Shown: positions 14,901 through 47,376, counted from the first letter of the stretch. The stretch: 64,000 nt of DNA from Monocercomonoides exilis PA203 (GCA_001643675.2 LSRY02000011.1:744001-808000), one strand, 5' to 3'. The notes: generated from the sequence alone by a model not told the origin. Translations and numbers: made by a program.

Positions 14901-16354
14901 CGCAAGGGAGATCCATTGTGTGCATATGTGACAGAGTCAGGCGAGGCAAAGATCAATCGATACAAGTTGTCTGAAAGTGGTATTGTTGAAGCTGTCACAT
15001 TGGCGTCAAAAGGTGGAGTTGGAGGAAGTGGTGCTTATTCTTCATTTTCAGCTGGCGGAGGAGGGCAAGGCGGTGCAGGCAACGCAGCAGGCACTGGAAT
15101 GGCGACAGGCGGAAGTCTGCCTCATCTTGTTCGTATCAAGCTGCGTCTGAACAGAAATCCTGTGATTGGTGACAAATTCTCTTCGAGACATGGACAAAAG
15201 GGTGTGCTGTCTGTTTTATGGCCTGATGTGGATATGCCGTTTACTGAGACTGGAATAACGCCTGATTGTATCATCAATCCTCACGCTTTTCCATCTCGAA
15301 TGACCATTGGTATGATGATTGAGGCTATGGCTGGGAAAGCTGGTGGAGCTCATGGTGTGTATGAAGATGGTACTCCGTTCCAGTTCACACAAAACAGAGG
15401 GCTTGAGTCTGGAAAAGACGACGAGTCAGTTGTCGATTATATTGGAAAGCAACTTGTGAAAGCCGGGTACAATTATTATGGAAGTGAGCCATTATACTCA
15501 GGAGTCTCTGGTGAATTACTAAAAGCAGAAATATTCTTTGGGGTTTGATGATTTATTTGTTTTAATCTTTATGAGTTTCTATTTGAAAAAAAAAATATTG
15601 ATTAATTTATTTTTAATCAAAATAATCATTTTAATAGGTTGTGTATTATCAGCGTCTTCGTCACATGGTTTCAGATAAGTTTCAAGTGAGGTCAACAGGA
15701 CCAGTCAATGCATTGACACATCAGCCTGTCAAGGGACGTAAAATGGGAGGAGGAATTCGTCTTGGAGAGATGGAACGTGATTCTTTGATAGCTCATGGGG
15801 TGTCTTTCATTATGCAAGATCGTTTGCTCCATTGCTCTGATGAACATGAGGTGTGTTATAATATTTGAATATGAGGTGAAGAAAAGCGGTTTTTGAATGT
15901 TTTTTATATCTTTAAAATCTATTGTTTAGTTTTTTGAAAATTTATGAAAACATTCATGCTTATAACATATTATTTTGTTCTTTTGTTCTAATTATTAATG
16001 CATAACAACACTTTATTTATTTATTTATTCATTTTATAGACACACATATGCACAAAGTGTGGCTCTTTGGTGTCTGTTGTACTGAGAGACAGGCAACCTT
16101 CAAGTTCTCAGAGCGGAGGAATGGACAAAGCACAGACCACAGGAATGGGTCAACATCAAGAAGGAGCTTCAACAGGCAACAGCGGACTGCAAGAAAGGGT
16201 GTGCTTGCTGTGTGGGAGTGGAGAGTATGTGGGGAAAGTTCGGATTCCGTATGTGTTACTTTATCTGGCAAATGAAATTGCTGGAATGAATTTGAAATTG
16301 CAGTTCCAGACAAGAAAGTTTACAGATGCGTTGGAAAATGATGACGAAGAGTGA
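11990..16354 (+). CDS. RPA2: DNA-directed RNA polymerase I second-largest subunit; exons 11990-13264, 13491-15542, 15638-15850, 16040-16354
   Basis: Motifs [78 protein letters not shown] and the C-terminal CxxC...CxxC. GLDLKQ|[21 protein letters not shown] is Pol I-type. Three phase-0 GT-AG introns (226, 95, 189 bp) join the ORFs in frame. Confidence 0.95.
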
Positions 16355-17373: not shown

Positions 17374-20300
17374 TTAATTGGGACTGCTAAAGGATGACTG
17401 CAGCCACGACCGATTTAACGGGCGAAGCTGAGAAGAAAACGCATTAGCAGAGACATACGTTGTGCAGTCAGAAACATTTGGGAGTGGGCGCATCGTTCTA
17501 GCATCCGCCACAAAGGCACACGAATTCACAGCCATTGGATTCGCTCCAATCATCGCGATTGGAACCGTGGTGTAAGGTAGGTTGGACGAATAAGGAGACG
17601 TGGGGGATGTGTGCATGGAGCGCGGGTCTTCAATCATTTCTCCATCCAGCGTGCGCAGCTCCCCAGTCTTTGTCCTGATGGAGACGACAGCCCTCATAAA
17701 TGGCAGCGAAGAGGAGTTCAGCGGAAACTGCGTAAAGTTGGATGACTGCAAATCCAGATAGTCCGCCTCTGTGAACGATTTGAGGAAGCGCTGAGCATTC
17801 GGCAGAGAAATCTCCAGCAGATGCGGGATTCTCGGCGAGATCAGCGGATGCAGGTTCATTGGAATAAGAGAATGGATAGAAAGTCCCTTTGCGCGTTGCA
17901 TTGGAAGCTGGCGCAAACTCTGAGTGGAAAGAAGCTGTGTGGATGTAAGTGATAATGTAGAAGAATTTTTCTGAGAAGAGAGAGAAGAAGAAATAGAAGA
18001 AGAGGAGGAAAGCTGAAGTTTTGATTGACTCGACGGGTGTAGTTGAGAGGAATATACAGAAGGCATTGAAGCAGACGGAGCAGAAGAAGACGATGAAGCA
18101 GGGTAAAAAGTGTGTGTATTTGATGAAGCGCTTGATGCGAATCTGTCTGGAAGCGACACCAAATGAAGGTTCCTTTGCTCAAAAGCAGCGCTTTTTGACG
18201 AGAAGACGCTCAATCCGCCAAAATAGAAGGACACAAACGGATTCATCGCTGAGCCTTTCGTCTCTTTGAGAATCTCGCTCATGCGCTGGATGCTTGTGGG
18301 CACATACACAAACACGATGTCTGCAAGCGACACCATTGGATTGATTTCTGCATTTTGTGCTGCTGAAATCAGAATCGATCTTGCACGGAGGATGTCGAGT
18401 GACCTCTTCTTTGACTTTAGTAGATTCATTGCAACAATCTGTTTCTCGTTTTGCTCGTAACGATCTGAAGACATCCTGTTAGGATGCTTGTGTTTGTTCA
18501 AATATGGCATTATTTGGCCTGACTGATGGCTGAATGGCACATATCGTGAATGTTGATCATCCTGCAGAAGAGAAGATGAAGGGTACACAGATTCCTCGAA
18601 CGCAGCTTGATGGCTAGACGGGCTTCTGTAGAGCGACGCCTCGTCAGAAGCACCAAAATCGCGTCCGTCGAGGAAATTGGATGAGCTTGATGTGAATGCA
18701 TCGAGGCGAGGGATGTCTGAAAATGGAAGCACAGAGGCAGAAGAGTAGATGGACAAAGCAGCATCTGGCACGCCTGCATCTGTGTATGATGAAGGGAGAT
18801 TCAACGACAGTGCATTTGTTGAGTCGCTTGAAAGCGACGAGAGCTTCTGAAAGACTGGGAATGCCTGACGAATCAGATTCTGATCGAATGACTTGAAGGA
18901 CTCAGAAAGCGAGAGCAGAGACGGGATAGACGAAGACTGCAAAGAAGAAGGAGCAGAAGCCATAGAATTCCTTTGCTGAGAAAGGACTGAAGACAACGGA
19001 GAAATCTGTGGTGCTCTGTTTCGTGGTGTTCCGACTTGTGAAAGCGGCTGCTGCGCAAAAGAAGAAGGTGACGAAGACAAAGTGGATGTAGAATATGAAA
19101 GCAAAGTAGATCCTTTCGTTCCGCTGGAATTCCGATCAGTTCTCAGCAGAGAAGTCACCTTTGATGACTTATTGGAATCTGAAGATTTTCCACCAAATGA
19201 CGATGAAGCAGTCTTTGCTTGCAGCTGAGCTTGTACAATTTTGGCCCTAGCAAGCAACGGCAGAATCGAATTCACCACTTTTGTGGACTCTTGCTTCAGA
19301 GTTACCAAAAAGCCTGTTGGAATGCATGTGAAAGAAGGAAACACCACCACAGAAGACTTAATCATGGCCTCGCCTTTAGCCAATAGAGAAGAAGCAGACA
19401 AAGGCTCGTCTGACAAACCCTGCAATCTGTGCTTCATAGGTACATAGCAGAAGAATCGGTGGATTTGCTCGATTGTACCCAATGCAAAGTTCAGGAACTG
19501 AAGAATCAATGGTGGTTTGTCTTCACTGATTGTAGTGAGTGAATGAGCAGCTGAGTCTGGCGAGTTGCATATCCAGCCCAATGGAATCTCTCCGCGTGTC
19601 AGATGGAGCCAGCTGTTCACGAACGACGAGGAATATGAACTCGACAGCAGATTTATTTCAATATCGAACGGAGACAGTGTGATGAATGAGATGTCGTTGA
19701 ACTCGTCTTTGTCGTCTCTCAAATCGTTTGGTGAAAGAGAGAATGTCTGTTGTTGTGCAGAAGAGAACCCGAATGCGCCAGTGGCCTGAATGTTTGGCTG
19801 GTTGGGATCAGTAATAGAACTGGAAGATGGCATGCTGGTACCATCTTGATTCAGCAGCACTTGAGACGAGGAGGAGCGGAAAGGCAGCGCAGATTGAGCA
19901 TTTGAAAGAGAAGAAGAAGAGGAAGAAGACGAAAATGAAGACATGAAAGGAGAAAATGACTGAGAGAGAGAGGGATCTGTGAAATCTGAAGGCGTGCCAT
20001 TGGAGAACGGAGACAAAGAATTGGGAAAACTCGAAGACGAAGAAATGTTAAGTTCGGTGAGTATATCTTCAGCAGGAGGAAGCGAGAAAGCAGAGCTTTG
20101 GAATGAGTTATTATCTTTGCGAGCTGTTGGAGCTTGAGCAATCCCTGAAGTTTGTCTAAGCTGTCTATCTGAAGGCATGAAAGCAGTGGCAGAAGATGCA
20201 GTAGATGCAGGCGCAGATAAAGAAGTCGTTAATGAAAGTGGGACAATCGAGTCAGACTCCATCGTTGCGTCAAGCGTGATCCGCTGAGAGTAAGTCAAAA

Positions 20301-23300
20301 AGCTTGGCAGCTGCTTCAGAGTGCAGTTGATTGTGTGCATGAAGGAGTTAGCCGAATTCGCCTCTCGCAGCATGCCTAGCACAGTTGGTGGGAGGGAATG
20401 TTCTGACATGCACACAGCGATAACAGCCTGTGTCAGCTTCTCCATGTTGAATAAGCGCGATGGCAGGAGCTGCTGCAATTCCTCACAGAAGCGCAGGACG
20501 ATTGCTGGATGGAAGACAAGTGTGTCGCAAGACGGGATGATTGAGAAGTGTGTGCTGCTGTCGAACGGCGAGTTGGAGGAGAACAGCGCCCGCAGATTGC
20601 TCAATGCTTCCACGTTGTCCCAGCGAACGTTCCACGAATGGAACGGAATCTCAAACACCTCGTCGCTCACAGTAGATGCGACCAGCGGAGGCATCGAATA
20701 GAAGTCTCCGATGGTAAAGTGCAGGCACGACTCCACAATCGTCTGCTGTGCCCCGTCGCTTCTGCCGATATCGTTGACTTTGCTGCCGTAAACACCAGAA
20801 CCTGAGTGCCTTCCGTGTGATGTTGGGTGGATCACAGCGTGTAGATAGTGGCTAATCTCTGTGAAGTACGTCTCGTGGGACGGGTTTGGAATGTCAGGAT
20901 ACACTGTCAGTGGTGAATCTGAAGAGAATGACTCAGGGTTGATCAATGAAAGGTGGAGGTTGACGAATATTCTTGTTGGCAAGGCACCCAACAGGAAAGG
21001 ATATGCATGCACACAGATCATCCGCAGCATGCTCGACCATATCCAGCTTTCAGAAGTGCCAGTTCGCATCTTCTTTGGTAACAGTTTGTGTTGGAAGAGT
21101 TGTTTGTTTGGCTGTGATGGCAATTTTATCAGAAACTTCATCAGACGTCTTAGCGCTGAATAAGGAATGCAGAAGCGTTTGTTGTTCATTCTTCCGTTGT
21201 TCACTCTGAAATACTCAGTGATGAGTGAGAACGAGCATATTAAGCAGAAGAGGAGATGCAAAAATTGCCTTGTGGAGAGCGATTCTTTCGTTGCAAGCTG
21301 GTCGCAGTGCTTTACAGTTTTCAGTAGTTTTTCTGATGATACTTTTCCCATCGCATCCACAATGCACGACGAAAGAAGGCCACGGAATGTGATTGCACTG
21401 CGGATTGTGATGCACTTCGCAAAGAATGAGAGATTTCGCGTCAAAACGTGCAGTCTTGAATCTGGCGAGAAGCATGAAGAATGCGACAGAATCAGCCACA
21501 AGATGCAATTTTTATGAACTTTTGGTGATGAAGACTGCTCAGGTGATGAAGCAGAACCAGCTGGCAGCAAGCTGTTAGCATTTTCATCTGTTCTTTTCTT
21601 CCAAAACGTATTCTCCATCCAATCTGAAAACAGCTTCAAGTAGTGCTCCGATGCATACTGAATTCCCTCTACAACAATCCAAGCACCCATTTCGACGCTG
21701 CCGTTGAGGTACTTCACTGAGATGTTCCATGCTGCCTCCCACACATCGATCAACGTCAGCGACGATGCGCTTTTCCGAGACTGCGACTCAATCAGCATCT
21801 TCGCGTCTCGATAGGCCTCAGAGATGTGAAGTTCAGACATCGGCTGCTTCCTTCTCTTTGCAAGCAAGATGATATCAGAGGCCAGGCGATAATCTTCCAC
21901 AGCAGACATTCCAGAATGGCTTTGTGTCGTCAAACAAATCACCTGCTTTGGAGACTCAAATCGCTCGAGAATGCTTCGGAACTTCAGAGATTTGGCATCT
22001 GTTGGATCAACGAAGTTCTCAAGTGAAGCAAGTCCACAATAGAAGAACGGAGATGGCAGCACAGACTGCTGCTGTGATGGTGTGTGGTGTGCTTGTGTGT
22101 AGTGATACGAAGGCATCCCGCAAAACAGATACGCCGACTCAACCCCAAACAGCGGCTGGGAGCTGATGCCCAGCATGACAGCTTCTCGCGTTCGAGATGG
22201 GATCAGCACTGAAATCAGCAGCATGCGCTGGAAGATGTTCAGCTGCTGCATCTGCGCGTTTGGATACTCTGCTAATTCTGGTGTCTCGTCGTTGAACCAG
22301 TCGGCCCAGCGGCGCTGTGTGTTGCTGATGAACACAGGAGTTGCCACAGTCGGCGAATGCGACTGGAAAAACGAAGGCGAGTTGCGAGAACGTGCAGCCG
22401 CCGGAGAATTTCCTTCGAGTGCTTCTTTGATTGCAGAGTAGCCTGACAGCGATGTCGGATCTAACACATCTCTTTGGTTGAACAGCGACTGCCTGCGCTT
22501 TCTGTACGACGAGTCTGCTCTCTTCTCGCGCGAGTCGTTTCGGAAGATCGTCTCGTCAAACGGGTTCGATCCACCTTCAGACTGCAAATCTTCGCTGTTT
22601 CCAGACGGGTCGACGCCAGAGAACCGCAGCCCAGACACGAATGTCTGCCGCTTGAACGAATACTTCGAGCGCTCCTTCTCATTCTGGATCATAAACATAG
22701 AGTCTGCCACGGCTGACGAGAAAGACAGCGTTTCGTCTGCTTTCGAATTCCCTTGCTGCATTTCACCACCAGATGCAAACAGACCTCCGGTGAGTGTTGA
22801 GTGCTGGTGTAGAGCCATCGGCGAGTGGACAACCGACGAGTAGCGCGACACGTAGTGCGACTTGTTCTGCCTCAGATCTCTGTGTGCATTGCTCATAAAA
22901 GACGGGTCATATAGCTCCATTGCATCCATCGTCTTCTGCGAGAACTGCGGCACTGATGTCTCCTGAAGGATGCGCAGAAGCACAGAAGAACGGCTTTCAG
23001 GGTAAAATGGCATGTGATCAATAGCAGAGAAGATGCTGTGGATCTGCGGATCCAAATCCAGAATCATCGGTCTGTACACTGGGCACAAAACTCCCAGCAC
23101 AAACAGGTCTTTCCACGACATGTCTGGAAGCCATGCAGACGCTGGGTTCTTTGGCAGAAGACCGAGCACTTGAAGAACAGCAGTTTCGAGAGGGAAACGC
23201 AGCTGTACAAGCTCTGCGAACATGACGCTCTGAGGATAGCACCTTCCCTTAAAAGCAGAAGATGGCTCTATTTTCGGAGGAAGCGTATGGACCATCACCG

Positions 23301-26300
23301 TTTGTGGTGAAAGCAAAGCATCCATTTCAATGCCCGACAGCCCCTTTCCCTCAGCGTTTGCCATCCGCAGCGACAAGAACAGCATCACTGTGATGTAATC
23401 CGATGGAGAAGTGTCTTTTTCCTGGTGTGTCTTCACCATATATGCAACAACACACTCAACAATTTGTGTTCTCTCGTGCTTCGTCATGCCAATTGGAGAA
23501 GTCTCACTGTTGTGATATTGAAGCAGCTTCATCAGAATCCTCCGCTCAAACAGAGACAGGTCTGCAAGCTCTTTTTGCTCGCTACTTTGCTTTGGCTCTT
23601 GCTCTGTGCCTGACGTACCTTGTTTGCTTCGAGTCATACTTCGACTTCTATTCCTGCTCTTACTCTGGCTCTGGCTCTGGCTCTGGTTTTGATTCTGATC
23701 ATGTTCCATTCGCTCAAGTTGTTCTTTTTCTTCTTGTCCCTGTTCTTGTTCTTGTTCTTGTCCCTGCTCTTTCTGCTGTTCCTTCTCTTGTCCAACTTCT
23801 TGCTCTTTTCCTTCTTCTTGCCCTTGTTCTTTTCCTTGCTCTGACTGCTGGTCGCTTATATCGTCGCTGTGAAGCTGATGCTGCTGCGACTGCTGGAGTA
23901 GAGAAGGCGACGACAGCTGCACGATGTTCTGGATGAGGTGCGGGCGCCGGATGAGTGAGGAGGATGAGGCAGCAGACAGATGAGAGAGAGAAGGAGGATG
24001 AAGAGATGACAGAAACGGTGTGGAAGATGAGTCACGCAGAGCAACAGTGGCTGAAGAGGAGTCGACAGATGTTGTGAGAGACGGGGAGTGGGAGAGAACG
24101 TCTATGGCAGACGCACCACTTGGAGATGCGTTTGGAGACTCGGCAGCTGCAGCTGCAGCAGCAGAAGAAGAGGAAGAGGAAGAAGAAGAAGATGATGATG
24201 ATGACGATGAAGGTGTTGCAATTACTGGGGAAGATGACGGAGTTGAGGAGGATGGGGAAGATGATGAAGAGGATGAAGAAGAAGATGGCTGCGAAGGAGA
24301 AGAAGAAGGCGATGATGAAGGAAGAGAATTCTGAAGACGAGGCGAAGGGAACGGCGAGAGTGTTGCAAGGGCAGATGATGTGTCTGAATCGTTTGTGCTG
24401 TTCAGAAGGATGAGCTCTGTCATCTTGCTCATCACATCCACCACGTGATGGAATTTTTCGTTTGCCCACATGACTGGCGAGTTCTTGTTGAACGGCTTGC
24501 CCACTGTGCGGATCATGGAGAACGAGAACATACTGAGCAGGTTGCAGAATGGGCGGATGTGGTTGTACTCCCAGCTGAAGCAGAACTCCAGCCACTGCAG
24601 CGCCGATCGAGATGCCAGCTCTTTCTCCTGCCACATGTCCACATCCTTCTTCACCGCCTCGCATTGCGACGCAAAGATCTCTTCCTCTTCTTCAGAGTGC
24701 GCCATGAACAGGGATATGAGTGTGCATGCATTGGGCGTGATGCTCTTGAACTCCTTCGACAGCTCGGCCTCTGCACTTTCTGTGGTTGACGACACTTCAT
24801 CGTCGTCCTCCTCAAACGCTGAAGACCTGTCTGTAAACAAGAAAGGCGTTGAGGCAGAGTCATCAATGGAGATAGCGCAGTCAAGCGGTGATACAGGCGA
24901 TGTAGGTGAAGAGAGAGCAGTCGTTGGCGATCCAATAGAAATAACAGACACAGCAGACCCGCTGTTCCCAGCAGACTCGCCTGTTACTTGTCTGTTCTGA
25001 TTGCTCTGGCTGCTGTGATTGCTGTGGCTGCTGAGGCTTCTGTAGCGCAGGCTGTGCATCGAGTTGTGCTGGTGCAGCTTCTTCGCACCGAACTCGGCCA
25101 AAGGATCAAGTGCCTGCGGAGACACAGGGATGAACTTTGGGCTTGTTGGAGAAAGACTCAAAGAGAAAGTGTTGTTCTGAATGGGCAGAGAAGCTAAATT
25201 GCCGGTGGAAGAGTCAGTTTTCTGTGTGGAGTCGATGCTGATGTCGAAGAGAGAGGCGTCCTTGGAAGAGGAAATAGACATGTTTGAGGAGCAGATTGAC
25301 GAAGACTCGTTTTGGTGGAGGATGGAGTTGATGGATGTGGCGGAGTGTGGAGGTGTCAAGGGAACAGAGTTGCTGATAACTAAGAGAGGAACAGAAAACG
25401 AAGAAGATGCGGAGGAAGAGGAGGAAGAGGAGGAGGAAGAAGAAGATGTGGATGAAGCTGAAGAGGAAGAGGACAAAGTCTTTGGGTTCTTAGCAGCATT
25501 GAAATTCAGCCCGTATGCCATTGATAATCTTTTGAAGGCTGGTGTGACTCTTGAAGTAGCAAATGTCAAGCGGAAGTTGGATGAAGGAGTAGCAGAAGCA
25601 GCAATAGTAGAAGCTGTAGAAGAAGAAGAAGAAGAAGAAGATGATGATGATGAAGCAGAAACAGCAGAAACAGCAGAAACAGCATCTGGATTGAGTGCCG
25701 AAAGCGACGGCGACACAATCATCTGCCTAGCCTCTGGTTCTTCCTGCAGAATTGGCGTGGTATTTCCACTGTATTTGGCAATAAGATCCAGATCGAGTGG
25801 CAAATCGCCCTTTTCTGAAGGCAAAGTGAGGATTCGGCTGTCGCGAATGTCAGTCAGCAGCGTCTGGATGAGCCTGGCGCGGCAGACGTTGCGCTGCACC
25901 TCGCTCTGGTAGGCCTCGTTGGTGTCTGGGTAGAGCGTGGCGATGGTTGTTCCGAAAAGATCAGGGGCTGTGTCTGTGCGGAGATGGTGCGACACAACAG
26001 AGCCGATGGCAGGCGACAGCGCCCAGCGGAAGAGCTGCTCGGAGGGGGCGATGATGACTGGGGTGCACAAAAGAGACCAGCCGTTGTTGAATGTGGCACC
26101 TGCGCCCATTCCCGCGACGAGGATGAGATCAACATCGCCTGGAAGATACATCGCCGGGTGGAATTTTGGCTGCAGCGGGTCGAATATGCCGTCTTCGGGG
26201 ATGATCAGCTCGAAGGGCATGGAATCGACAGTGCAGTTGTCCATCGTGTTGGTCTCGTAGAGGATGCTCATCGACTTCCGCTGGGACTGCATGCTGAAGG

Positions 26301-35300: not shown

Positions 35301-38300
35301 TTTCATCTGCAATTAACAGAGGACCAGATATCTTCGCTTTGGGGCGATTTGCATCGAGAAAAGCAACAAAGATTGAATCGAAAATAAGAGCTGACGGGCC
35401 AGAAAATGGGAATGAGGGCAAAGAATTCCACGACGGAATCCATTCGAATCCATAGCGAAGCCGATTTAAACCATCATTTTGGTCGAGCGAACGGTCAGAA
35501 CACGGAATTATTTGCAGCAATGTGTTCTTTGTTTTGTCATATTCCATTGTTCTTCCTTGCTCCAACTTCAGTTGCAGAGCACGCATGTTTATCATTCCTT
35601 TGTAGCGATAGTCGTTTGACTCAACTTTCATAATCTCATTCACTTCTCGTGTGTCTGCAAGAGGGTGCATCACAAGTGGGTGCTGGAGGAACCCAGGAAC
35701 TTGCTTAATGGCAGCCAAGCGAATCGCGTCTTGGTGTGAAAAGTCATACAGCACAACAATTAGACGCTCCACAAAACTGCGAAATGTCAATAGTACTTCA
35801 GTGCTGCTCATGCGATTCGTCCTTCTCATTCGTCTTTGAGGCCTCGGCCGCATTCCTTTATCGTCTCCGCCATCTTCTATATCAATCCCCGAGCGCCCAT
35901 CCATTCTCATCTCATCAGCATCAACGATTTCATTTCCCGATAGATAAACACTGTGCATGTTGTGATAGGGTGTATTTCTGCCCACTCCTAACCTTGCGGT
36001 TGAATCAAAGCCGGTCTCATCATTTGACAGATTCTCTTCCTCATCAAAGTTTTCTTGTTCAAAGAATGCTAACAAATCGTCTTCATTATCGTCTTCGTCC
36101 TCGTAGCTTTCTTCCTCCTCTTCGTCGTCGTCGTCATCATCCAAATCATCGAGCTCTGATTCACTCTCGTGGATATCCTTTGTTGAGTCGCTTTGATCTG
36201 ATGCTTCAGTTATCGTGCTGAACGTGGTGAGGCTGCGAGAGGACGTGGGAAGTCCCATGTCCAGCTGCTCCGTCGCGTTGCTTATGTGTGAAATAGTTGT
36301 GCCACTAACCCATCCACTGACTGAAGATCTGCCTTCGATTTTGCTCCTTTGGCTGGTGGAATATGCTGTTGCTAGCTGCGAGCCGGCTGCTTCGTTCGGA
36401 TGCACTTTTGGCAAAAACGAAAAAACGGGAGAAGAAGGTGCTTTGATGTTTCTGGCCAACTCGGCTTTTTCGAATTCTGCTCGTTTCGATGGATCCATTT
36501 CGTCCTTTGACAACTTTGCATCATTTCTCAATGAACTGTCAACGTCGCTTCCTTTGAAGGCACTTTGGCGAATATCTTGGCTTTTCAGTCCATCTTTGGC
36601 AATTTCGTCTAACCGAAATCTTTTCTCCAAACTCATCTTATCTGAAAATCCCTTTTTCGGATCAACATTTAATTTTGAGTCTCTGTAATTCTGCATCAAG
36701 TCCTTTGCAAAATGCATCTGCTGCTTGAGTTTCCTGTGCTGCTTCCTGATCAGCTGGAGAATGAACTTTTTGTGTCTCACGAACGGGAATGGAATACGCT
36801 GGATGGACATAAGAAATGCCATGCAGTGATAGACATTCAGGTTCAGATCTTCGATGTGTGCTGTGAATGCTGACAGCTCTTCGTTCACAAAATAGTCGCT
36901 GATGACTCTCACTTTCAGCGAATATGCCAGTCGCACTGCTGCATAGAACACTTGCATCTGGACAGGATAGTTCTCCACAAAGTCAAACTGCATAAACAAG
37001 TAGCAAAACCAATGGAAGAACGTGTCGAATTCGTAGAGCGACTCCAGCGCAGATATAACTTGCTTCAGCAAAATTTTCGAGTTAGTCTTTGCAATCACCT
37101 CAGGAAGAGACCAGATGTCAGAGCCAATGTCCAAGGGGTCTTCGTTGTATATCATCCTCTCACCGCCAGATCCGACCAAGTAATGTGCAACGAATGAAGA
37201 CTCGTTGCGTGTGAGCTCAAAGCACAGCTCCTGTGCGCCTGGAACAAACTTCGACAGCAAATATGAGGGCACTTCACATCTTGTTCGGCCTTCAATGAAA
37301 GTCCCAGCAAAGTTGATCAGCTCGCTCGCAGTGAAAATGAGGAAGCGAGGCTTGTCAACAGCAATGCTCTTCATCTGCAAGGTTGGCGAATCAGATGTTA
37401 TCAGATTGGCTGCTTTGATGTAGCTCTCCAGTTCGTGCGTGATGTTCTTTGAATTGCGTATGTCGCTGAGTGAATGCATCTGCTCCAGTGTGATTGAGAT
37501 TTGCTCAAGCCCGTCAAAAAATGCGAGTGTGGATTGGTCCAAATGAATGATGTGGTGCAGCATCGCTGCTTTCACTTGGTTCATCACTTTCTGCACCTGG
37601 AAAAGCACATCGAGAAAACTGGTGATTTGCACGATCATGTTGATTGCAGAGTCGATTTCCTTCTGGTAGTCGCATGAATTCTCAGTCAGTGCGATCCCCA
37701 TGAGCTGGTGAAAGTCGTTGTTTGATTCCTCAATCAGCTTCGGGCACAGGCTTATGTCAACTGTTGGAAATGGGATGTCTGTCATACTCCATTTGCCTCT
37801 TTTCTTTTTCTTTCCTTTGCTCAGCGAAAGAGATGAATTCGATGCGTGTGAAGAACGAACAGCATATGAAGAAGAAGAAGAAGAACCAGGTGAAAGCGAT
37901 CTCTTCTCGTTTTCCCTGTGCTTGAAAATGAGCGGAAGTTTTGTAGTGGCCCATTTTTCTTCAATGTTCAGAATCTTCCTCTTCAGCACCGAAAGCTGCT
38001 CGCATTTTTCAAGCACAGTTTCAATGGCAGTTTCGCAGTCAGGGGTGCATATGTCAAAGAGCACTGACAATTCTATTTTCTTCTTCTGTGCCAATTCGAG
38101 ATAGTTATCAAATTGTGCGCTTGGTGCATGCATCTTCTTTAAGAGATCGCTCCAGTATTTCTCCTCAATCGATGTTTCTTTGATCCTGTTCATAATCTTC
38201 CACGCAACACTCCACTTCGTCAGCTGCGCCTTAAACGTGCGAAAGACCGATGTTGATGTTACTGGCTCAGTCATCGAAGATATGAAAGAGACAGACTTCT

Positions 38301-41300
38301 CAAACAGATCGAGCGGAAGATCCTCTTTTTCGAACTCGTCCCAGGTGTATTTAAAGAGCTCCTGTTTGATGTTTATGTCTGTTGACTTGATCAGGTTCCA
38401 CAGACTCGAAAGCTGCGTGACGTAGTTTTCGCACTCGTCGAAGTGGGGCAGAGGAAAATTGCTTGTGTGCGCGAATGAAGTTCTGATCTCGCCCAGGCTG
38501 GAGACTGATGCTGCGATGTCTTCGAACTCCTCTGTCAATGACTTCATCTTGCTGATGGCGTCCTCCCACGGCACTTCGTCTGTAAGTGGCGTGAACTCCT
38601 CGTCAAAGAGCTTTTCGTGGTACCGACTGATTCTTGCAATGGCTGTCCTGCCCATTGTGGATATCTCGTCCATCAGCATCTGCTCAATCACCTGGATTCG
38701 CTCTGCTGCTATGGACAGCTGGGTGCTTTTCAGTGTCTTCCACAGCTGCTCCAGCTCGACTGTGAGTGCGTTTAAGTCGTGATAGGCAACAGATGAGAAG
38801 TTTGTGAGCTGCGACAGACGAGAATTCACCAGAAGCAAGAAAGTATCAACGTTCTGCACATCTTGCAGTGCATTTCTTGTCGCATTCACCACTTCAACTT
38901 TCTGTGCAGACGACAAGTGAGTGAACGTCAGATCGAGAAAGCGCAAGATGGACGAGAGCACGTTCATCCCCCGCTGGCACTCTTGAGTGAGCCCGTTGTA
39001 CATGAATATGCAGAACGGGAGGCTCCACAGCACAGTGCGGGAAAACAGGTCCTGCTTCAGCGTCACCACGTCGATCGCCACCCACCCGAGAGGCACCCAC
39101 TGCGCAAGCTCAGACACACTCTGCTGCCACTTGTTGATCATCATCACGTGGCGGAGCCATTCGCACACGGGAGGGTTGCAGTTGCACTTGTTGATGACCC
39201 TTTTGAAGAGGTCGATCGCATCCACAACAAGATTGTCCCTCATCACAAACTTGTCTGCATTTCCGTTGTGTTTCGCGGTGGTGAGTGCAAAAGACGAAGC
39301 AACTCTAACAAGTGAAGGGGCAGAGACATTCGAAGGGAAGTAAGAAGAAGCAGTGGAGGATGAAAAAGAGGAAGAAGACGAGCTAGAAGAGAAAGAAGGC
39401 TGAGATTGGTCTCTTTGAAATCTGTCAAGTGACTTGTTCAACGAATCATAGACAACTTTAGTTTTTTTACTCTGATCAGTTATCTCATACTCAAACTCCT
39501 GATACAGAGCATCCTCGCCCGTCTCACTTGTTGCAACCTGCTTCGGATTTTTCGAGATGCCAGCGAGTTTCGTCTGGCACTGCCACTCAGCTTTCCTGTC
39601 TTCCAGCGACTCACTCACTTTAGCCAGTCTGATAAACGAGCTCGGAAAAACCGGAATTGCTGGTTCATCTCCAGCCAGGAGTGGTTTGCGCACAAAGGCT
39701 TCAAACGCCTCTTCCGGCTGCTTTGTCCACAGCGGCTCAAACAGCAGCAGCCGCTCTCTGAATTCGATGCAGCGCTTTTCGGACTCAAAGAGAACAGAAG
39801 ACAGCTGAGATGTGATCTCGCTGGTCTGCTCAACATCGTCCAGCTCAACAAGATTGCCCAGGTTTTCCATCATTTCGTCGAACAAGGCCACAAAATTGAT
39901 GCGATTGGGCAGGCTGCGACCAGCTGAATGCAACGCGACTGTTGGAAGCGATGAGGACATGGAGGAAGAAGAGGAAGAAATGAGCGGGGTGCCGAGTGTT
40001 GGGGTGGATGCGTAGTTCTGTTTAGGAGTGAGAGGCATCTGCAGAGAAGAGGTGAAGGCGGTGGAGAGGTCGAGTGTGCGGGGGGAGGAAGTGTTTGACG
40101 GTATAATCAAACCAGACGGAGGTGTCATAGTGGAAGACATGGGTGAAGACATCATTGCCACAGAATTCTGTAAGGAAGAGGAAGAAGACACGTGGAACTG
40201 TGCGGAAAACGTCGAAAGCGGAGTCGCCGATGCGTCTTCTGAAGCTGCTCTGGATGCAGCGACAGAGCCAGGGGCCATCGTGGGTGTGATTGGGAGCGAG
40301 GGCACTTCAGCGCTGTTAACTGAGTGGAATCCGAAGCAGAGCTGGCCTCCCGAAATGAGGAGCGGGATTTGAATCAAGGCGCGGTTGGAGCGGATGCTGT
40401 TGAGGATGTTCTGCAAAGTGAGGTTGACGGAGTTGATGAGTGTGGTGCGGAGGTTGTCGAAGAGCTGCCGGCTGATCATCTGCAGCGCGCTATCGTCGAC
40501 CTGCTCTCTTTCTAAATAGAGCAGCATGTTCTGCCGCATCGTGTGCAGCCGCTTCTCAAACAGCTCCTTCTCTTCCATCATCCTTCTGGGAATGGTCTTT
40601 GTTAGCTCCATGAATGAATCCTCCGTCAAAATCTCTGCCGGCATCGTTGACACCAGCGAGTTCTGCAGCGTCGTCAGCTCGTTGTTGTATGCTGCTCTGA
40701 GCGACGACAAGTAGCCCAGCTCCTTCAGCAGGGACTTGATGGCGTCGAGGCAGTGCGAGGCAAATGCCTGGAGATCTGGGTCAGACCAGGTGATCTGCTT
40801 CAGCCCGCGTTCCACACAGCCGACGACGAGGTTCACGCGCATCCGCAGGCACATCCGCATCAGCTGGCTGGACGAGGACATGAAGGACTTGTACTCGGTC
40901 AGGAAAAACACAAACCGCTGGCGCTGGTAGAAGAGCTGCGTCATCGTCTTCGCGATGGTTAGTGCGTGTGGAGTGACTTGTGAGTGCAGAGATTTCACAA
41001 TGCGGAATGTGGAGAGCAGCCAGTAGTAGTCACCAAGTGGCACATAAATAGACATCGGGTCGCTGTGATCGCGCAGCACAAACACAGTTTCGCCGAACTG
41101 GTCGCGCCGCAGCAGCTCCAGCTGCTCCATCCACGCAAACAGCCTGCTCTGAAAGGAAGAGGAAAGGGCGCTGTGGAGTTCAGAGAAACGCCGGTGCACG
41201 GAGATAAGCTCAGCAGCGAAGAGGGCAAAAAGCTTGGCGTTGGAGCTTTCGGCGTAGAAGATGCTGTAGGTGGATGAAAAAGTGCCTGGAAGGGCGTGGA

Positions 41301-44300
41301 AGGCAGGGTGGGCAGAGGAAGAAGGAGAGACAGGAGAAGAAGAGAAAAGAAGGGTGCAGCCGGAGAAGAGATGGTTGTCTGTGTGTTGTTTGGATGGGGA
41401 ATATGGTGATTGAGATTGAGACTGAGGTACAGTTGCTGACGCAGAAGAAGAAGATGATGATGATGATGATGATGATGATGAAGATGTTAACAGCTGAGGA
41501 GCTGAAAGAGAAGTAGTAGAAGAAGACATCAATGGGGCAAAAGTGGTGTGGATGTCAGCAAAGTTGTCACCTGTTGTTGAATTAGAGGCAGAAGACATGT
41601 TTGGCGATGTATCAGGCGTGGCGCTGGCGCTGAAGGGGATGTTTTTGAGATCGAGCGAGTTGAGCGAGAAAGGAGGGCTGGAAATAGATGAAGCAGGTGA
41701 TTTGGAGGGAAAATGGCTGGAGTTGGATTTTTCGTGCTCGTGCTTGTGTTCGTGTTCGTGTTCGTGTTCTTCTTTGTGTTCATTTTCGATGGATGGACTG
41801 GTTGTCTCGTTGACAAGTGGGATGGAATCTGATTGGTTATTGTCTAAGAATTTAGAGTATGTGAATGTGAATATATATTGGATGCATATTTATATGAAAT
41901 CATTCCATTATTTCAAAGAAAGCATCAAAAAAAAAAGACAAAAAATAAATACAAAGAAAAAAACAGTCTAATCCATTCAAACCTTCCATTCCATTCGCCT
42001 CCTTCTGTGCTGCTGCTCTTCCCTGAGCATTCTTCTCTGCTTTTTTCTTCTCTTCTTTCTCTGCCTTCAGCTTTTGCAGCTCGTTTTGCGTATCAACCGG
42101 ATAAGGCAGCGACTCCAGTGTATGCAACAACGCCAGCATTAACTCAGAATTCGCCAGCAAAATCTTCAGACCCAAAATTTGAGCAAACATTGCAGGTAAA
42201 TTCGGGAGCAACGGCGGCTCGTCAAGTATTTTCCTGTAATCTGCTGTGATTCTGTTGCAGATCGAGTCAAACGGCGCAATAATCGTCTCCCTCCGCTTCA
42301 TAATCGAGTAAAAAATTATTGGGTTCCGGAAAAACGGGGAAATAGAGCTCATGATGGCAGCAAAGTCCCTCACAGACACAGCTGCCTCGAGAGCAGTGAG
42401 CACAGCGAATGAGATGTTCTGGGCAGTCTCAGTAACCGTCGTGAAGATCTTCTTCAGCTTGTCGGGACGGAAAACAGAGTCAAAAACATCGCTGCCTTGT
42501 TTTGTACCGATGATGTGGGGCAGAAGCTTCGTGTGTGCAAAGAGAAAGGGGGTGGATGTGGGAAGAAGAGAAGAGGAGGAGGAAGAAGAAGAAGAGAAGG
42601 AAGAAGAAGAGGAGGAGGAGGAAGAAGAAGCCGATGGACCAATAGTTGAGCGATAAGCAGAAGTAGCAACAGATGAAGACGACGAAAGAGAATAAAGTGA
42701 ATACAAATCAGATCTGAACGGGTCAACCGTCTTTCTCGCAATATGCAGTCGAAATCTTGAGTTCGAATTGCCCAGCGACTGATCCTGTGTCATAGAGCTG
42801 CTTGAAAGAGGAGAATGTTTCCGGCTCGGCGGAAGTGAGTTGCTGCCCATCGCAGCAGGCACCCCCGTCGCGAACGAGATGCCTGCGCCTTCCAAAGATG
42901 TGTTGTCTGTCGCAGAGACAGAAAGAGAACTGGAGAAAACAGAAAGTTTTCCGAAGTTATTTCCCGCAGAAGACGAGGCGCTCAGCGAGCTCAGCGAAAA
43001 AGGTGGGTCGTAGTCGCTTCCAGGTGAATTTGTGCGGAAGATGGACTGGCCAAACGCTTGTGACTGAGACAGAGCCTGATTCTGAGACTGACTCTGATTC
43101 TTTCCCTGTGATTGTGTCTGTGTGTTCAATGCATTTGTGCCTTGTTCTTTGCCCTGCATATACTCACTGCTGTTCTCCTTTGATGCGCGTGACTCGTCTC
43201 CTCCACTCCAATCAAGCAGCCCGCTCTGCTGCTGATAGCTCGAAGGCCAGGGACGCTTGCCCCGCAGCAGCTTCAACTTCCCAATCCTTCGCCCGCTTTT
43301 GCTCCTCCCTTGTAAATAGCCTCGGGTCTTGCTTTGACTTCTGCTTCCTGTCAGATTTCTTCCCTGTGATCTTCCCTGACTTCTTCCTTGGCTGCTGCTG
43401 CGACTGCGGGTGGCGCTGTTATTGCGGCTCATGCTTCTGCTCCTTCCTCTCCCCACGCTCTTGTGATGCCTTCCTCCTCTTCCCTTGCCCATCTTCCTCG
43501 CTTCAAACCCATCTTCCCCTTTTTCCTTCATCGATGCTGCTGCTGCTGCCGGCCCATTCTTCACCACTGCAAAGTATCTTCCTTCTGCTGCCTCCACCAC
43601 TGCATCCAACTCCTCCCCTTCTTCAATCGTGCGGCAGTTCACATGCAGCAGCGTCTTCGCAAACGATACAAAATGCCTCTGCGCCGACTCCACCTGCCTC
43701 GCAGCGGCTGTCCCTGCAAGCCCAGACGCCTTCATCTCTTCGCAGGCAGACAAGTCCCGCTGCATCTGCAGGACAATCTTCAGAACAGTGCATTGGGAGA
43801 TTAGGTTGTCCAGTGGGGCAACAAGCGACAGAATATCACGAGGAGGGCTGGCTTTGGCGTGGCTGTGCTGTTCAGAGAGCATTTCGGAGAGCGGCTTGCG
43901 TGGCGGAGGAGGAGGGGGTGTGGGGACGAAGGGGGGCCATTGGCAGATGAAGGGAGAGGAGGAGGAAGAAGATGAGGAGGAGGAGGAGGAGGAAGAGGTG
44001 GAAGAAGAAGAAGAAGATGATGATGATGATGAATGTTGTTCTGTTGAAGCCGGAGAAGCAGCAAATGCTGTTGGGATAGCTTTTGTTGTTGCAGTCACTG
44101 TTGATGTCGTGGTCGTTGTAGTGGTGGTGGTCGAAGAAGAAGTTGTAGTAGTCGTTGTTGTTGTTGTGGTTGTGGTGGTTGTTTCTGCAGGTGCTGCTGA
44201 ATTAATCATAGCAGAAACAGCAGAAGCATCAGCAGAAGCATTAGCAGAAGCAGCATTTGTTGCAGTTGTTATAGAAGTCATATTTGTGTTTGTGTTTGTA

Positions 44301-47141
44301 TTTATATTTGTTATCATTGTCGTTGTTTGTGGAGGCTGCTGCTGCTGTTGCTGCTGTTGCTGCTGTGTCGATTGCTGAAGTGAAGGTGATTCAGTTTCTA
44401 TTTTCTGTTGAGTGTTTGTTGGGGTTGATGAGGTGTTTGAGTGAGATGGCCCGTCTGTTGCAAGACGGGGCGATATGTCTGATGATGCATCACCAGTAAA
44501 GAGAGAAGAAGAAGAGGAAGAAGAGGAGGAAGAAGAAGAAGAGGAGGAGGAGGAGGAGGAGGGAGCAGACGATGAAGAGGAGGAAGAAGAGGAAGAAGAA
44601 TGTTGAGGAGTAGGAGAGCAAGAACGAGCAATGTGATGATGATGAGCATGATGATGGCTGGGCTGATGGCTGTGGTGTTGATGATGTTGTTGATGTTGAT
44701 GATGATTATGGCTATGGCTGTGATGTGAGTGATGTGGGTGAAGTGAGTTGTGGTGTGGGTGTTTCAGCAGCTGATCGGTTTCTAAGCCTTGTTCTTCTTC
44801 CTTCTCTGCTTCCTGTTGTTGTATTCGTGAATGATGATGATTATGATTATGATGATGTTTGCTGAGGTGGAAATGGCTGTGCACATCAAGCGATTTGTGC
44901 TGTTTTGGGCGTCTGTGAATTTCATTCAATTGATTTTCGGCTGATGTTTCTTGTGTCATTTTGTTGTCTGTTTGCTCATTTGATTGAACATTCGGTTGTT
45001 TGGTGTCTTTGAATGAAGAAGCATTATTCAACAATGCTTCGATGTGCTTGTTGTTTTGATGGGAATCCAAAGGGGCTGTTGGTTGGTCAGCTGACTGGAA
45101 AGAGGAACTTGCAAAGGCTGATGAAAGAGAGTGGTCTGCGGAAGCAGCTGTAGATGATGAAGGTGGATAAAGAGAAGGAGAAGGAGAATGTGAAGGTGAA
45201 GGAGGAGAAGAATGTGATTGTGATTGCGATTGTGATTGTGGTGATGATGCAGAAGCAGATAAAGCAGCAGCAGAAGAAGAAGAAGAAGAAGAATGTGAAG
45301 ACTTTCGTTCTGAATCTGACGATGTATCATTACTCTGATCAGAAGAAGAGCCAGAAGAAGAACCAGAAGAAGAAGAATCCGAGTCCAGTCCCTGTGACGA
45401 CCCCATCTGAGCAGCGCTGCTGTACCAGTTGTAAGTGTGCACAAGCCGAAACACAGCTGTCTTCAGATTGCGTGCTGCTTCCATTGCTCCATCGACTCTC
45501 AGTGCAATGTCTGGATCGTCCACAATAGGATACGCATATGTCGCCATTCCAAACTGCAGCCCTGGAAAATACTCCCTCGCCACACACTTCACTTCCTCGC
45601 TCTCAATTTCTCTTTCTCTCTCTCTTCCTCTCTTCCTCTCTCTTTCCTCTTCTCTCTCTTTCTTCCTCTGCCTCCTGCTGCTTCTCGAGCGGTGCCTTTC
45701 TCGCACTCTGCTTCCGCCTTGTCTGAACGCTCTTCGGTTCGCTTTTTCGATCTCTTTGTCTCTCTTTCTGGGCCCTTCTTCTGCGCTGCTGGTGTCTTCC
45801 TCATCGCCAATCGCCTGGAGCGGATGGAGCGTAGTCACCACAAGCTGTGTATTGTCTGCGTATTCTGAATTAATTGCGTTTTTGCCGGCATCTTTCCACA
45901 GCGTCCGCTCCCATTTCCGCTGCAACGCGTTATTCCGCATCTCGTTCAAGTGCCTCAGTGCCTCTGCGGAGAGCGGGGCGTGCCCTAAAAGGATGTGCTC
46001 TTTCGCCTTCGCAATGAAATCGCCGATGAACGTCTCGAGCATTGGGTGGAGCAGCGAAGGCTCTGATAGATACTCCCCCAAAGAGAACAGAGAGCGGAGA
46101 AATAGATGGGCAGAGCTCAGAGAACGGGGAAACTCGTACGGCAGCGTGTTGATGAAAGACAGCAGAAAAGGCGAGATCAGCTTGTATGCGCTGTTGTGTG
46201 TCTTTGCAATTTCAGCTGAGCGGGCAGCCTTTCCAAACGCACACCTCATTTTATCCTTTCTTTCCTGACTTAGACAATATGAAGGAAAAGATTTGATGTT
46301 TCTCAATGTTGTTCTAAAAACTTCTGCTCTCTTCTTCCAATATAAAATAAGTGGTATTGATCCGCCAATATGGCTGAGATAATCATAAGATGGAGGATGT
46401 ATCATTTTTTTCAAAAAAAGAAGTTGTTGATCAAATCGCTTCATCGGACGAACACACGACAATATGTCGTGACGAAAAAGTACAATTGGTATATTCTAGA
46501 GATATGCATTAATAATATTCAAATAAAATAAAAAGAAAATAATTTTTTAAATATAAAACCTTTGACAATTGTTCTTCGTCTTTGAGATCAATCATTAATC
46601 TTTCCGTTTCTTGAATAAGTTTCCTATCTGCATCTTTTTGCATTTCGCTGATAATTTTTGTAGTTGAAAAATGAGTTTCTTGTTCGTCCAATTGTCGAGA
46701 AGATTCATTATCACTTAAAGAAGGAAGAGCAACGTGTTTAAGAAAATGATTCAAATATGAAATTGCAGTTTCGTGATGAAAAGAAATTTGAGTTTTCGTT
46801 TTAATGGTTTCTTTTGTCAGTGCTGTCATTTCAAGTTTCAAAAATGATAAAACAGTATCTTTTCCAGAAAAAGTTAAAATGTTCATGGCATCCAAAGGAG
46901 GACTTTCGTTTGATACAAATATTGATTTAAATGTTACTCTTCTTATAAAAAACAATGATACGCACGATGGTTCATCAATAAATAAATCAATTGGGTCACA
47001 ATTATAAATATTAGGCGTATATTCTAAATGTATATCAGAAGAAATTCCAAATATTTTTCCTACAATTACAATAATTTCTTCTCTTGCTGATCTTTGTTTT
47101 CGTTCTTCAGTAGTAATTAAAAATTGTTCAGTAAATGCCAT
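17374..47141 (-). CDS. Giant divergent dynein heavy chain-like protein (~9,854 aa); exons 47141-46560, 46495-41983, 41843-17374
   Basis: GT-AG introns at 46559-46496 (phase 0) and 41982-41844 (phase 1) fuse the 210, 1520 and 8074 aa ORFs in frame. Colinear DHC motifs: KPRFLIFTASELI (cf. FPRFYFLS), GSGGERM, RYGFEW, LGKNLYIFDC...WILFD (AAA1), GYPGLGKS (AAA2), LWLWECERVY, stalk coiled coil, MIGDTIVL, LNIFQRMLLISVLIPSR, GAWIVVE, VHKNCILWL, GEIPLGW. Confidence 0.85.
26430..26600. repeat. (GAGGAA)n-type tract encoding a ~55-residue poly-Ser run in the dynein-like gene
   Basis: Long perfect hexamer run; the longest of many poly-Ser tracts in this gene. Confidence 0.9.
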
Positions 47142-47376
47142 TTACAGAATAAGAAAATATTCAATTATAATATTATGGTAACATGAAAATTTTAAATAAT
47201 GTTATTACTGATCTGTGGAAAAAAGTTTGCATTTCTAATTATTAAAGTGTTAAGGATAATAAATTTTTATATTGCTGCTTTCAATAATAATGGCATTCGT
47301 CAATCTTGCTATTAATATTTTTAAAATGTGTTATTTTTCGAACAATTGAATAATTCTTATCTTCAATTGTTAAAGA
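47142..47376. promoter_or_regulatory. Putative bidirectional promoter
   Basis: 235-bp AT-rich spacer between divergent start codons at 47141(-) and 47377(+). Positional inference only. Confidence 0.45.

What the first reader, a model, noticed from the sequence alone, without database searches (positions are those of the whole stretch)
17374..47141. A ~9,850-aa dynein heavy chain homologue that appears unable to act as a motor
Seen: three ORFs splice into one 29,565-nt CDS with DHC landmarks in canonical order from tail to C-terminus. The AAA1 Walker A position reads GPLLIADERE (~35290-35330) instead of GPAGTGKT, and Walker B reads FDRLE instead of FDEFN. AAA3 (PIILLDDSYLDG) and AAA4 (AVIDTEGLNK) also lack P-loops. 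Only AAA2 keeps GYPGLGKS (~33990-34014). Known: AAA1 hydrolysis drives the dynein power stroke, AAA2 binds nucleotide structurally, and typical DHCs are ~4,000-4,700 aa. Inference: a 24-kb stop-free exon implies selection, so this may be a pseudo-motor used as a microtubule cross-linker or scaffold (e.g. axoneme or axostyle), conceptually like DNHD1.
Basis: partly seen in the sequence, partly recalled or inferred. Interest (0 to 1): 0.85.

Follow-up and report, generated by a model that had tools for sequence, protein, structure and literature searches.

The report
Giant catalytically dead dynein heavy chain
This is an intact 9,854-codon gene of the gut protist Monocercomonoides exilis for a dynein motor protein that keeps its overall build, including a normal-length microtubule-binding stalk, but has lost the ATP-burning site that drives movement. 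It is one member of a family of such "dead motors" found so far only in oxymonads.

Summary
Three minus-strand ORFs join through two GT-AG introns into a 29,565-nt CDS of 9,854 codons.

Family profiles align colinearly with canonical dynein heavy chains:
- Linker, AAA1 to AAA4 and stalk/MTBD: hhalign probability 99.9, E 2.7e-37.
- Start of AAA6: probability 94.7.
- AAA5 and the C-terminal domain could not be recognised.

Motif status:
- AAA1 has no GK[ST] and no Walker-B glutamate.
- AAA3 and AAA4 have no P-loop.
- The AAA2 P-loop is kept.

The same pattern holds in 13 compared relatives: 5 M. exilis, 7 Blattamonas, and one contig from an organism that reads TAA/TAG as sense codons. These form one clade against six canonical dyneins (support 100/100).

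The stalk is 333 residues against 334 in a canonical dynein. It folds with pLDDT 85.8 into a dynein stalk/MTBD.

RNA-seq contigs from one study hold about 85% of the sampled words of the gene's 5' 5.9 kb.

The gene therefore cannot work as a canonical motor. A static role as a microtubule-bound strut or scaffold is inferred, not shown.

The scan has already described paralogues of this family on other pieces of this genome (s1-471129, s1-463753). I found no published description of the family.

The parts
46560..47141 (-). Exon 1 (582 nt, 194 codons), start ATG at 47141
   Evidence: A 210-codon ORF in 29% GC DNA, with an in-frame stop directly upstream. Residues 127-189 align with the first 63 residues of paralogue P0002 (BLASTP E 0.004, colinear). 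The start codon itself is not verified.
46496..46559 (-). Intron 1 (64 nt, GT...AG, phase 0)
   Evidence: Read from the sequence; GC 12.5%. The join gives ...QLSK|NIPIVLFRHD..., which matches GQEVVLFRPQ in P0002. No junction reads were obtained.
41983..46495 (-). Exon 2 (4,513 nt): dynein tail with long Ser/Thr/His/Gln-rich low-complexity inserts
   Evidence: Its two ends match the N-terminal regions of P0001 and P0002 colinearly. 43% is low complexity.
41844..41982 (-). Intron 2 (139 nt, GT...AG, phase 1)
   Evidence: Read from the sequence; GC 23%. The split codon g|ac restores the frame of the large exon.
17374..41843 (-). Exon 3 (24,470 nt, stop-free until TAA/TAG at 17374-17376)
   Evidence: open frame of 8,171 aa. 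P(no stop) is about 1e-157.
40759..41202 (-). End of the tail domain (DHC_N1-like)
   Evidence: Pfam DHC_N1, E 7.5e-4, profile positions 416-562 of 562, below the curated cut-off.
37054..38439 (-). Linker (DHC_N2)
   Evidence: Pfam DHC_N2, 32.5 bits against a cut-off of 31.9. hhalign aligns 378 of 433 columns.
34699..35454 (-). AAA1 module with its nucleotide site destroyed
   Evidence: Walker A remnant GPLLIADERE at 35296-35325. Walker B remnant FDRLE at 35137-35151. Family profile against PDB dyneins, E 2e-11. hhalign and MAFFT columns.
33991..34014 (-). AAA2 P-loop GYPGLGKS, kept
   Evidence: G-x-x-G-x-[GA]-K is kept in all 13 family sequences. The AAA2 Walker B aspartate position reads Q.
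32140..32751 (-). AAA3 module without a P-loop (PIILLDDSYLDG at 32605-32640)
   Evidence: hhalign against canonical GxTGxGKT. Family columns.
29452..31284 (-). AAA4 module without a P-loop, split by long Ser-rich inserts
28408..29406 (-). Coiled-coil stalk with microtubule-binding domain (333 aa)
   Evidence: Family profile against PDB dyneins, E 3e-7. hhalign is nearly gap-free against 334 canonical residues. AF2 model pLDDT 85.8. The top 50 Foldseek matches are all dynein heavy chains or the axonemal/dynein complexes that contain them (best E 6.5e-7).
25699..27036 (-). Family-conserved blocks at the place where AAA5 is expected (identity not established)
   Evidence: Conserved in 7 family members. 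No match by PDB profile, hhalign, Pfam, atlas or fold.
21214..22329 (-). Start of AAA6 (W..W....PE...LP motif and D6 region)
   Evidence: Family profile against DNAH5 3962-4016, E 2e-6. hhalign probability 94.7-95.5.

Best explanation
Shown: the locus is one intact gene with two short 5' introns and one 24.5-kb exon. Its 5' 5.9 kb is held by RNA-seq contigs. It encodes a 9,854-residue, fast-evolving paralogue of the dynein heavy chain.

What it keeps, in order: the end of the tail, the linker, AAA1, AAA2, AAA3, AAA4, an antiparallel coiled-coil stalk of canonical length with a microtubule-binding domain, and the start of AAA6. About half of its length is extra. That extra sequence is mostly Ser-rich low complexity and family-specific blocks in the tail and after the stalk.

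What it has lost: the P-loop lysine/threonine and the Walker-B glutamate of AAA1, and the P-loops of AAA3 and AAA4. Only the AAA2 P-loop is kept. Even in working dyneins AAA2 binds nucleotide without driving the cycle, and here its Walker-B acid is missing too.

The same pattern is found in every member of an oxymonad-restricted clade, so the loss is old and the rest of the protein is under selection.

Inferred: with no hydrolysis-competent site, the protein cannot perform the ATP-driven linker swing. It most likely works as a nucleotide-stabilised, static dynein-shaped strut. It would be anchored by its tail and would touch a microtubule through its stalk. Possible places are the oxymonad microtubular cytoskeleton (axostyle or preaxostyle) or the flagella. 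It might also act as a non-motor partner of active heavy chains.
For: Gene model:
-.
- Colinear BLASTP to paralogues across ORF2 and ORF3.

Homology:
- Pfam DHC_N2 above its cut-off; weaker DHC_N1 and AAA_6, all in order.
- Family profiles against PDB dyneins: E 2e-11, 3e-7 and 2e-6.
- hhalign against six canonical M. exilis dyneins: one colinear hit of 2,368 columns, probability 99.9, E 2.7e-37.
- Domain map.

Motifs.

Clade and distribution:
- A search of 1.84 billion representative proteins finds full-length family members only in M. exilis and Blattamonas, plus metagenome fragments. Scores then drop sharply to ordinary dyneins at about 1e-13.
- Tree support is 100/100.

Stalk/MTBD fold.

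Expression: four RNA-seq runs of one study hold 84-86% of the sampled words of 41400-47300.

Established knowledge: AAA1 is the main hydrolytic site of dynein (PMC2533788).
Against: - No experiment shows microtubule binding, lack of ATPase activity, or location in the cell.
- The MTBD has lost motifs that canonical dyneins keep, such as the PP turn and a Trp. Binding is therefore not assured.
- AAA5 and the C-terminal domain could not be recognised, so a complete six-module ring is not shown.
- The stalk model used canonical dyneins in its alignment, which favours a dynein-like fold.
Confidence: 0.65

Rival explanations
1. It is a non-motor partner that pairs through its tail with an active dynein heavy chain. 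An example would be an axonemal two-headed dynein. It would hold, brake or position the active chain rather than forming an independent strut.
For: The end of the tail and the linker are kept. The genome has about 17 canonical heavy chains available as partners. Heterodimeric heavy chains are established for axonemal dyneins (general knowledge).
Against: No partner was tested. The tail is interrupted by more than 600 residues of low complexity. This largely overlaps with the best explanation and differs only in the context of action.
Confidence: 0.2
2. It is still an ATP-driven motor that uses an unconventional site, either AAA2 or a pocket without a P-loop.
For: The AAA2 P-loop is invariant in 13 relatives. 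The linker and a stalk of canonical length, which are the mechanical parts, are kept.
Against: The AAA2 Walker-B acid position reads Q and is not conserved in the family. AAA1 lacks both Walker motifs in all members. No dynein is known to move without AAA1 hydrolysis (PMC2533788 for the role of AAA1).
Confidence: 0.07
3. It is a decaying 'ghost' gene, a duplicate on its way to becoming a pseudogene, as has been suggested for DNHD1.
For: The enzymatic motifs are lost. End branches in the tree are long (median 0.84 changes per column over all rows; canonical rows 0.15-0.64). About 20% of the protein is low complexity. The 'ghost gene' idea for DNHD1 is in PMC8754002.
Against: The 24.5-kb frame is open (P about 1e-157). 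There are conserved blocks and an invariant AAA2 P-loop across two genera and a third lineage. Stalk length is preserved to within one residue. Paralogues have been duplicated repeatedly and retained. RNA contigs hold the gene.
Confidence: 0.03
4. The gene model is wrong: the upstream ORFs are separate genes, or more exons lie upstream.
For: Exon 1 has the GC content of intergenic DNA (29%). Its match to P0002 is weak (E 0.004). No junction reads were obtained.
Against: Both introns have GT-AG ends, fitting phases and the low GC typical of M. exilis introns (25.2% mean, 124 nt mean length; PMC6759080). ORF2 and ORF3 are colinear with the paralogues. A 210-codon ORF in 29% GC DNA is unlikely by chance.
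Confidence: 0.05

Closest known systems
Canonical dynein heavy chains (cytoplasmic dynein 1 and 2, axonemal outer and inner arm chains)
   Same: Same order of linker, AAA1-AAA4, stalk/MTBD and AAA6. Stalk of 333 against 334 residues. AAA2 P-loop kept. Profile-to-profile probability 99.9.
   Different: No Walker A or catalytic glutamate at AAA1. No P-loops at AAA3 or AAA4. Twice the length. AAA5 and the C-terminal domain are unrecognisable. It forms a separate, long-branched clade.
[quoted passage not shown]
   Same: A dynein heavy chain relative outside the standard classes that has been regarded as not being a working motor. DNHD1 is linked to a microtubular structure (PMC8754002, PMC9916431).
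   Different: DNHD1 is a single gene of normal length. This protein is one of a multi-gene family of roughly 5,000-10,000 residues restricted to oxymonads. Orthology was not tested here, and no DNHD1 sequence was compared.
Paralogues in the same genome already reported by this scan (s1-471129, s1-463753) and NCBI entries MONOS_8071 and 'dynein haevy chain, unidentified'
   Same: Same loss and retention pattern of nucleotide motifs and the same giant size. 28-41% identity over AAA1-AAA3 with the close subfamily.
   Different: This is a distinct locus (contig C5:744001-808000). Its nearest paralogue, on contig C1, is 38-41% identical. The largest giants of the genome did not reach E 1e-5 with this subfamily's profile.

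Membership tests
Dynein heavy chain superfamily | Linker domain (DHC_N2) directly before the AAA ring | tested here: met
   Pfam DHC_N2, 32.5 bits against a cut-off of 31.9. hhalign aligns 378 of 433 columns.
Dynein heavy chain superfamily | AAA1 to AAA4 modules in one chain, in canonical order | tested here: met
   One colinear hhalign hit, probability 99.9, E 2.7e-37. PDB dyneins at E 2e-11 with five colinear stretches.
Dynein heavy chain superfamily | Antiparallel coiled-coil stalk with a microtubule-binding domain after AAA4 | tested here: met
   AF2 pLDDT 85.8. The top 50 Foldseek matches are all dynein heavy chains or complexes containing them.
Dynein heavy chain superfamily | AAA5 and AAA6 modules completing a six-module ring | tested here: inconclusive
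   The start of AAA6 was found. AAA5 was not recognised by profile, Pfam or fold.
Dynein heavy chain superfamily | Tail domain (DHC_N1) | tested here: inconclusive
   E 7.5e-4, 18.7 bits, below the cut-off of 28.3, and only the end of the profile is matched.
Active dynein motor | AAA1 Walker A GPAGTGKT and Walker B D-E | tested here: not met
   The positions read GPLLIADERE plus a 7-8-residue insert, and FDRLE. The motifs are lost in all 13 family sequences.
Active dynein motor | Regulatory nucleotide sites at AAA3 and AAA4 | tested here: not met
   No GK[ST] at either aligned position.
Oxymonad giant dead-dynein clade | Monophyly against canonical dyneins, with loss of the AAA1 motifs and retention of the AAA2 P-loop | tested here: met
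   Tree support 100/100, motif table, and the sharp score drop in the representative search.
DNHD1 orthologues | Closer to DNHD1 than to other heavy chain classes | not tested
   No DNHD1 sequence was compared. The nearest hits outside the family that carry names are dynein 2, DNAH14, a ciliary beta chain and a trypanosome cytosolic chain.

The most novel reading that the evidence does not exclude
These giant dead dyneins are the fixed cross-bridges of the oxymonad axostyle or preaxostyle microtubule sheets. On this reading a motor family was converted into static lattice struts and multiplied in oxymonads. That would give a molecular handle on the long-known dynein-like bridges of axostyles, which have been compared with a precursor of the cilium (PMC3160578).
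Probability: 0.2. Interest if true: 0.85.

Novelty: new variant of a known kind. Interest (0 to 1): 0.6.

Why it matters
Dynein is normally defined by its AAA1 engine. Here a whole lineage-restricted family keeps the dynein body, including a stalk of exact canonical length, while discarding every hydrolytic site and doubling in size. That makes it a natural experiment on what a dynein scaffold can do without motor activity.

It also offers candidate components for the oxymonad microtubular cytoskeleton, whose bridge proteins are unidentified as far as I could find. The genome paper treats the M. exilis dynein set as nearly complete and does not mention this family in its main text (PMC6759080). 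One member is merely labelled 'dynein haevy chain, unidentified' in NCBI.

Tried and rejected
- Whole-piece Pfam scan: no hits. Low-complexity stretches had to be cut out first.
- Single-sequence phmmer of AAA1-2 against PDB: nothing.
- AAA5 region: PDB profile search, hhalign with 4 and 7 family rows, Pfam on 7 members, ESM atlas. The AF2 model had pLDDT 48.9 and Foldseek gave no match below E 0.9. All uninformative.
- C-terminal 1,275 residues: the atlas gave only a 0.77 chance-level hit. hhalign hits to Dynein_C were colinear but insignificant.
No junction or depth data exist as a result. Exon 2 was used after that only for local length, GC and composition counts.
The family's position among dynein classes is therefore unresolved.
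- My first impression that the exon 1 start (MAFTEQFL) matches the start of P0002 was not borne out. BLASTP instead aligns exon 1 residues 127-189 with P0002 1-63.
- The spliced protein was never joined for a search or a fold. Exons were searched separately by reference, and only residue counts were summed.
- Supplementary files of PMC6759080 are not held.
Full report
**Organism and locus.** The closest database proteins are from Monocercomonoides exilis and Blattamonas nauphoetae. Earlier notes of this scan name the genome as M. exilis. The window is contig C5:744001-808000 of an 82-Mb assembly.

**Gene model.**
- The minus strand carries ORFs of 8,074, 1,520 and 210 codons.
- Reading the junctions gives two introns with GT-AG ends.
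  - Intron 1: 46496-46559, 64 nt, phase 0.
  - Intron 2: 41844-41982, 139 nt, phase 1.
- Both introns are very AT-rich (GC 12.5% and 23%). M. exilis introns have a mean GC of 25.2%, a mean length of 124 nt, and are all GT-AG (PMC6759080).
That is 9,854 codons.
- The middle and large ORFs are colinear with paralogues P0001 and P0002.
- Junction 1 creates NIPIVLFRHD, matching GQEVVLFRPQ in P0002.
- Exon 1 residues 127-189 align with P0002 residues 1-63 (E 0.004).
- Exon 1 has only 29% GC, so its start codon is the least certain part of the model.
- The chance of 8,155 stop-free codons is about 1e-157.

**Is it a dynein heavy chain?**
- A Pfam scan of the raw pieces found nothing.
- After removing low-complexity stretches, three hits appeared in canonical order: DHC_N1 (E 7.5e-4), DHC_N2 (E 5.5e-8, above the curated cut-off) and AAA_6 (E 0.013).
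- Profiles built from the window protein and its relatives hit solved dynein structures:
  - AAA1-AAA3: E 2e-11, with five colinear stretches.
  - Stalk: E 3e-7.
  - W..W....PE...LP motif at the start of AAA6: E 2e-6.
- I took six canonical M. exilis heavy chains from the genome. Each is one unbroken ORF of 4,423-5,320 codons, and one was annotated with Pfam.
- Profile-to-profile alignment against these gave a single colinear hit of 2,368 columns from the linker to the end of the stalk (probability 99.9, E 2.7e-37). A second hit covered the start of AAA6 (probability 94.7).
- Domain map in residues of the large ORF:
  - Linker: 1054-1515.
  - AAA1: from 2049.
  - AAA2 P-loop: 2529-2536.
  - AAA3: 2950-3153.
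  - AAA4: 3439-4049.
  - Stalk: 4065-4397.
- AAA5 and the C-terminal domain were not recognisable by any method tried. Family-conserved blocks do lie where AAA5 is expected.

**Nucleotide sites.**
- AAA1: canonical GPAGTGKT is replaced by GPLLIADERE followed by a 7-8-residue insert. Walker B FDEFN reads FDRLE.
- AAA3: reads PIILLDDSYLDG where GxTGxGKT should be.
- AAA4: has no P-loop. hhalign places it about 20 residues further on.
- AAA2: keeps GYPGLGKS, but its Walker-B aspartate position reads Q.
- No hydrolysis-competent site is therefore detectable. AAA1 is the main hydrolytic site of dynein (PMC2533788).

**Family and distribution.**
- The genome has about 17 canonical heavy chains. It also has at least a dozen giant open frames of 5,600-13,800 codons with weak AAA_6 matches that begin after the Walker A position.
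- The close subfamily has five members: the window plus loci on contigs C1, C16, C50 and C25.
- A profile search of 1.84 billion representative proteins found nine full-length family members: two from M. exilis and seven from Blattamonas. It also found a few metagenome fragments. Scores then drop sharply to ordinary dyneins at about 1e-13.
- One fragment lies on an 18.8-kb contig of a public sequencing run.
  - The contig is open for 3,785 codons only if TAA and TAG are read as sense codons (194 TAA, 39 TAG and 0 TGA in frame).
  - It is colinear with the window protein from AAA1 to the AAA5 region.
  - This points to a third lineage with a reassigned code, likely an oxymonad.
- All 13 sequences lack the AAA1 Walker A and the Walker-B D-E pair, and all keep the AAA2 P-loop.
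- In a maximum-likelihood tree the 13 form one clade against six canonical dyneins (100/100).
  - The window gene groups with the C1 and C16 paralogues (100/99).
  - M. exilis and Blattamonas copies mostly cluster by species, which suggests repeated lineage-specific duplication.
  - Family branches are several times longer than canonical ones.
- The family's parent dynein class is unresolved. I could not fetch more loci.

**Stalk and microtubule-binding domain.**
- The stalk region aligns almost without gaps to canonical dyneins, 333 residues against 334.
- An AlphaFold2 model (15 sequences, pLDDT 85.8) shows two long helices flanking a small helical bundle.
- Its top 50 PDB matches are all dynein heavy chains or the axonemal and dynein complexes that contain them, including a stalk/MTBD crystal structure (best E 6.5e-7).
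- Caveats:
  - Canonical dyneins were in the alignment used for the model.
  - The family has lost the PP turn and a Trp that canonical MTBDs share, while keeping motifs of its own (LW..D, LP, W).

**Size and composition.**
- 16.7% of residues are Ser and about 20% of the protein is low complexity.
- Relative to a canonical chain, the extra length is distributed as follows:
  - About 1,900 residues before AAA1.
  - About 550 residues within AAA1 to the stalk.
  - About 2,100 residues after the stalk.

**Expression.**
- Four metatranscriptomic RNA-seq runs of one study hold 84-86% of the sampled 31-letter words of 41400-47300.
Splicing and expression level are therefore unverified.

**Interpretation.**
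- Shown: an intact, selected dynein heavy chain paralogue without a working ATPase site, whose 5' part is held in RNA-seq contigs and which has a preserved stalk.
- Inferred: it acts as a static, possibly nucleotide-stabilised, microtubule-associated strut or as a non-motor partner of active chains.
- The axostyle or preaxostyle is an attractive location, because oxymonad axostyles carry bridges between microtubules (PMC3160578 cites the classic work). Nothing here tests that.

**Comparison with what is known.**
- The nearest concept is DNHD1, an 'orphan' or 'ghost' heavy chain of mammals (PMC8754002) that is needed for sperm flagella (PMC9916431).
- I found no paper describing the oxymonad family.
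- This scan has already followed up two paralogues on other DNA of this genome and reached the same reading (s1-471129, s1-463753). This locus is therefore a further member of that family, not a first sighting.

Noticed in passing
whole genome G000, e.g. C45:398014-398457, C56:364707-365162, C69:1318715-1319173, C41:54036-54485, C14:90499-91137, C10:189557-191779: At least a dozen further giant open frames (5,600-13,800 codons) give weak AAA_6 matches, most of them starting after the Walker A position. Most did not reach E 1e-5 with this subfamily's profile. There may therefore be several separate subfamilies of giant, degenerate dyneins.
   Followed up: partly
L022 (contig of public run SRR8661007), whole locus: An 11.4-kb stretch is open for 3,785 codons only if TAA (194 in frame) and TAG (39 in frame) are read as sense codons, with no TGA in frame. 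It encodes a member of the same dead-dynein family. The organism uses a reassigned genetic code and has 29% GC.
   Followed up: partly
window 17374-47141 and the canonical dynein loci L009-L020: M. exilis averages 0.8 introns per kb of coding sequence (PMC6759080). This 29.6-kb CDS has only two introns, both within the first 5.3 kb, and six canonical heavy chain genes are single unbroken ORFs. Dynein genes here are strikingly poor in introns.
   Followed up: no
window 11990-15548 (+): Two adjacent ORFs carry RNA polymerase second-largest-subunit domains, including the Rpa2-specific domain. They are probably one RNA polymerase I subunit gene split by an intron.
   Followed up: no
window 56493-58481 (-): A 662-codon ORF with a DDE_1 endonuclease domain (pogo/Tigger-type transposase) lies in the AT-rich region downstream of the window's centre.
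   Followed up: no
window 39-5264 (+): A 1,741-codon ORF ends in the C-terminal half of a protein kinase domain. It probably continues across an intron.
   Followed up: no
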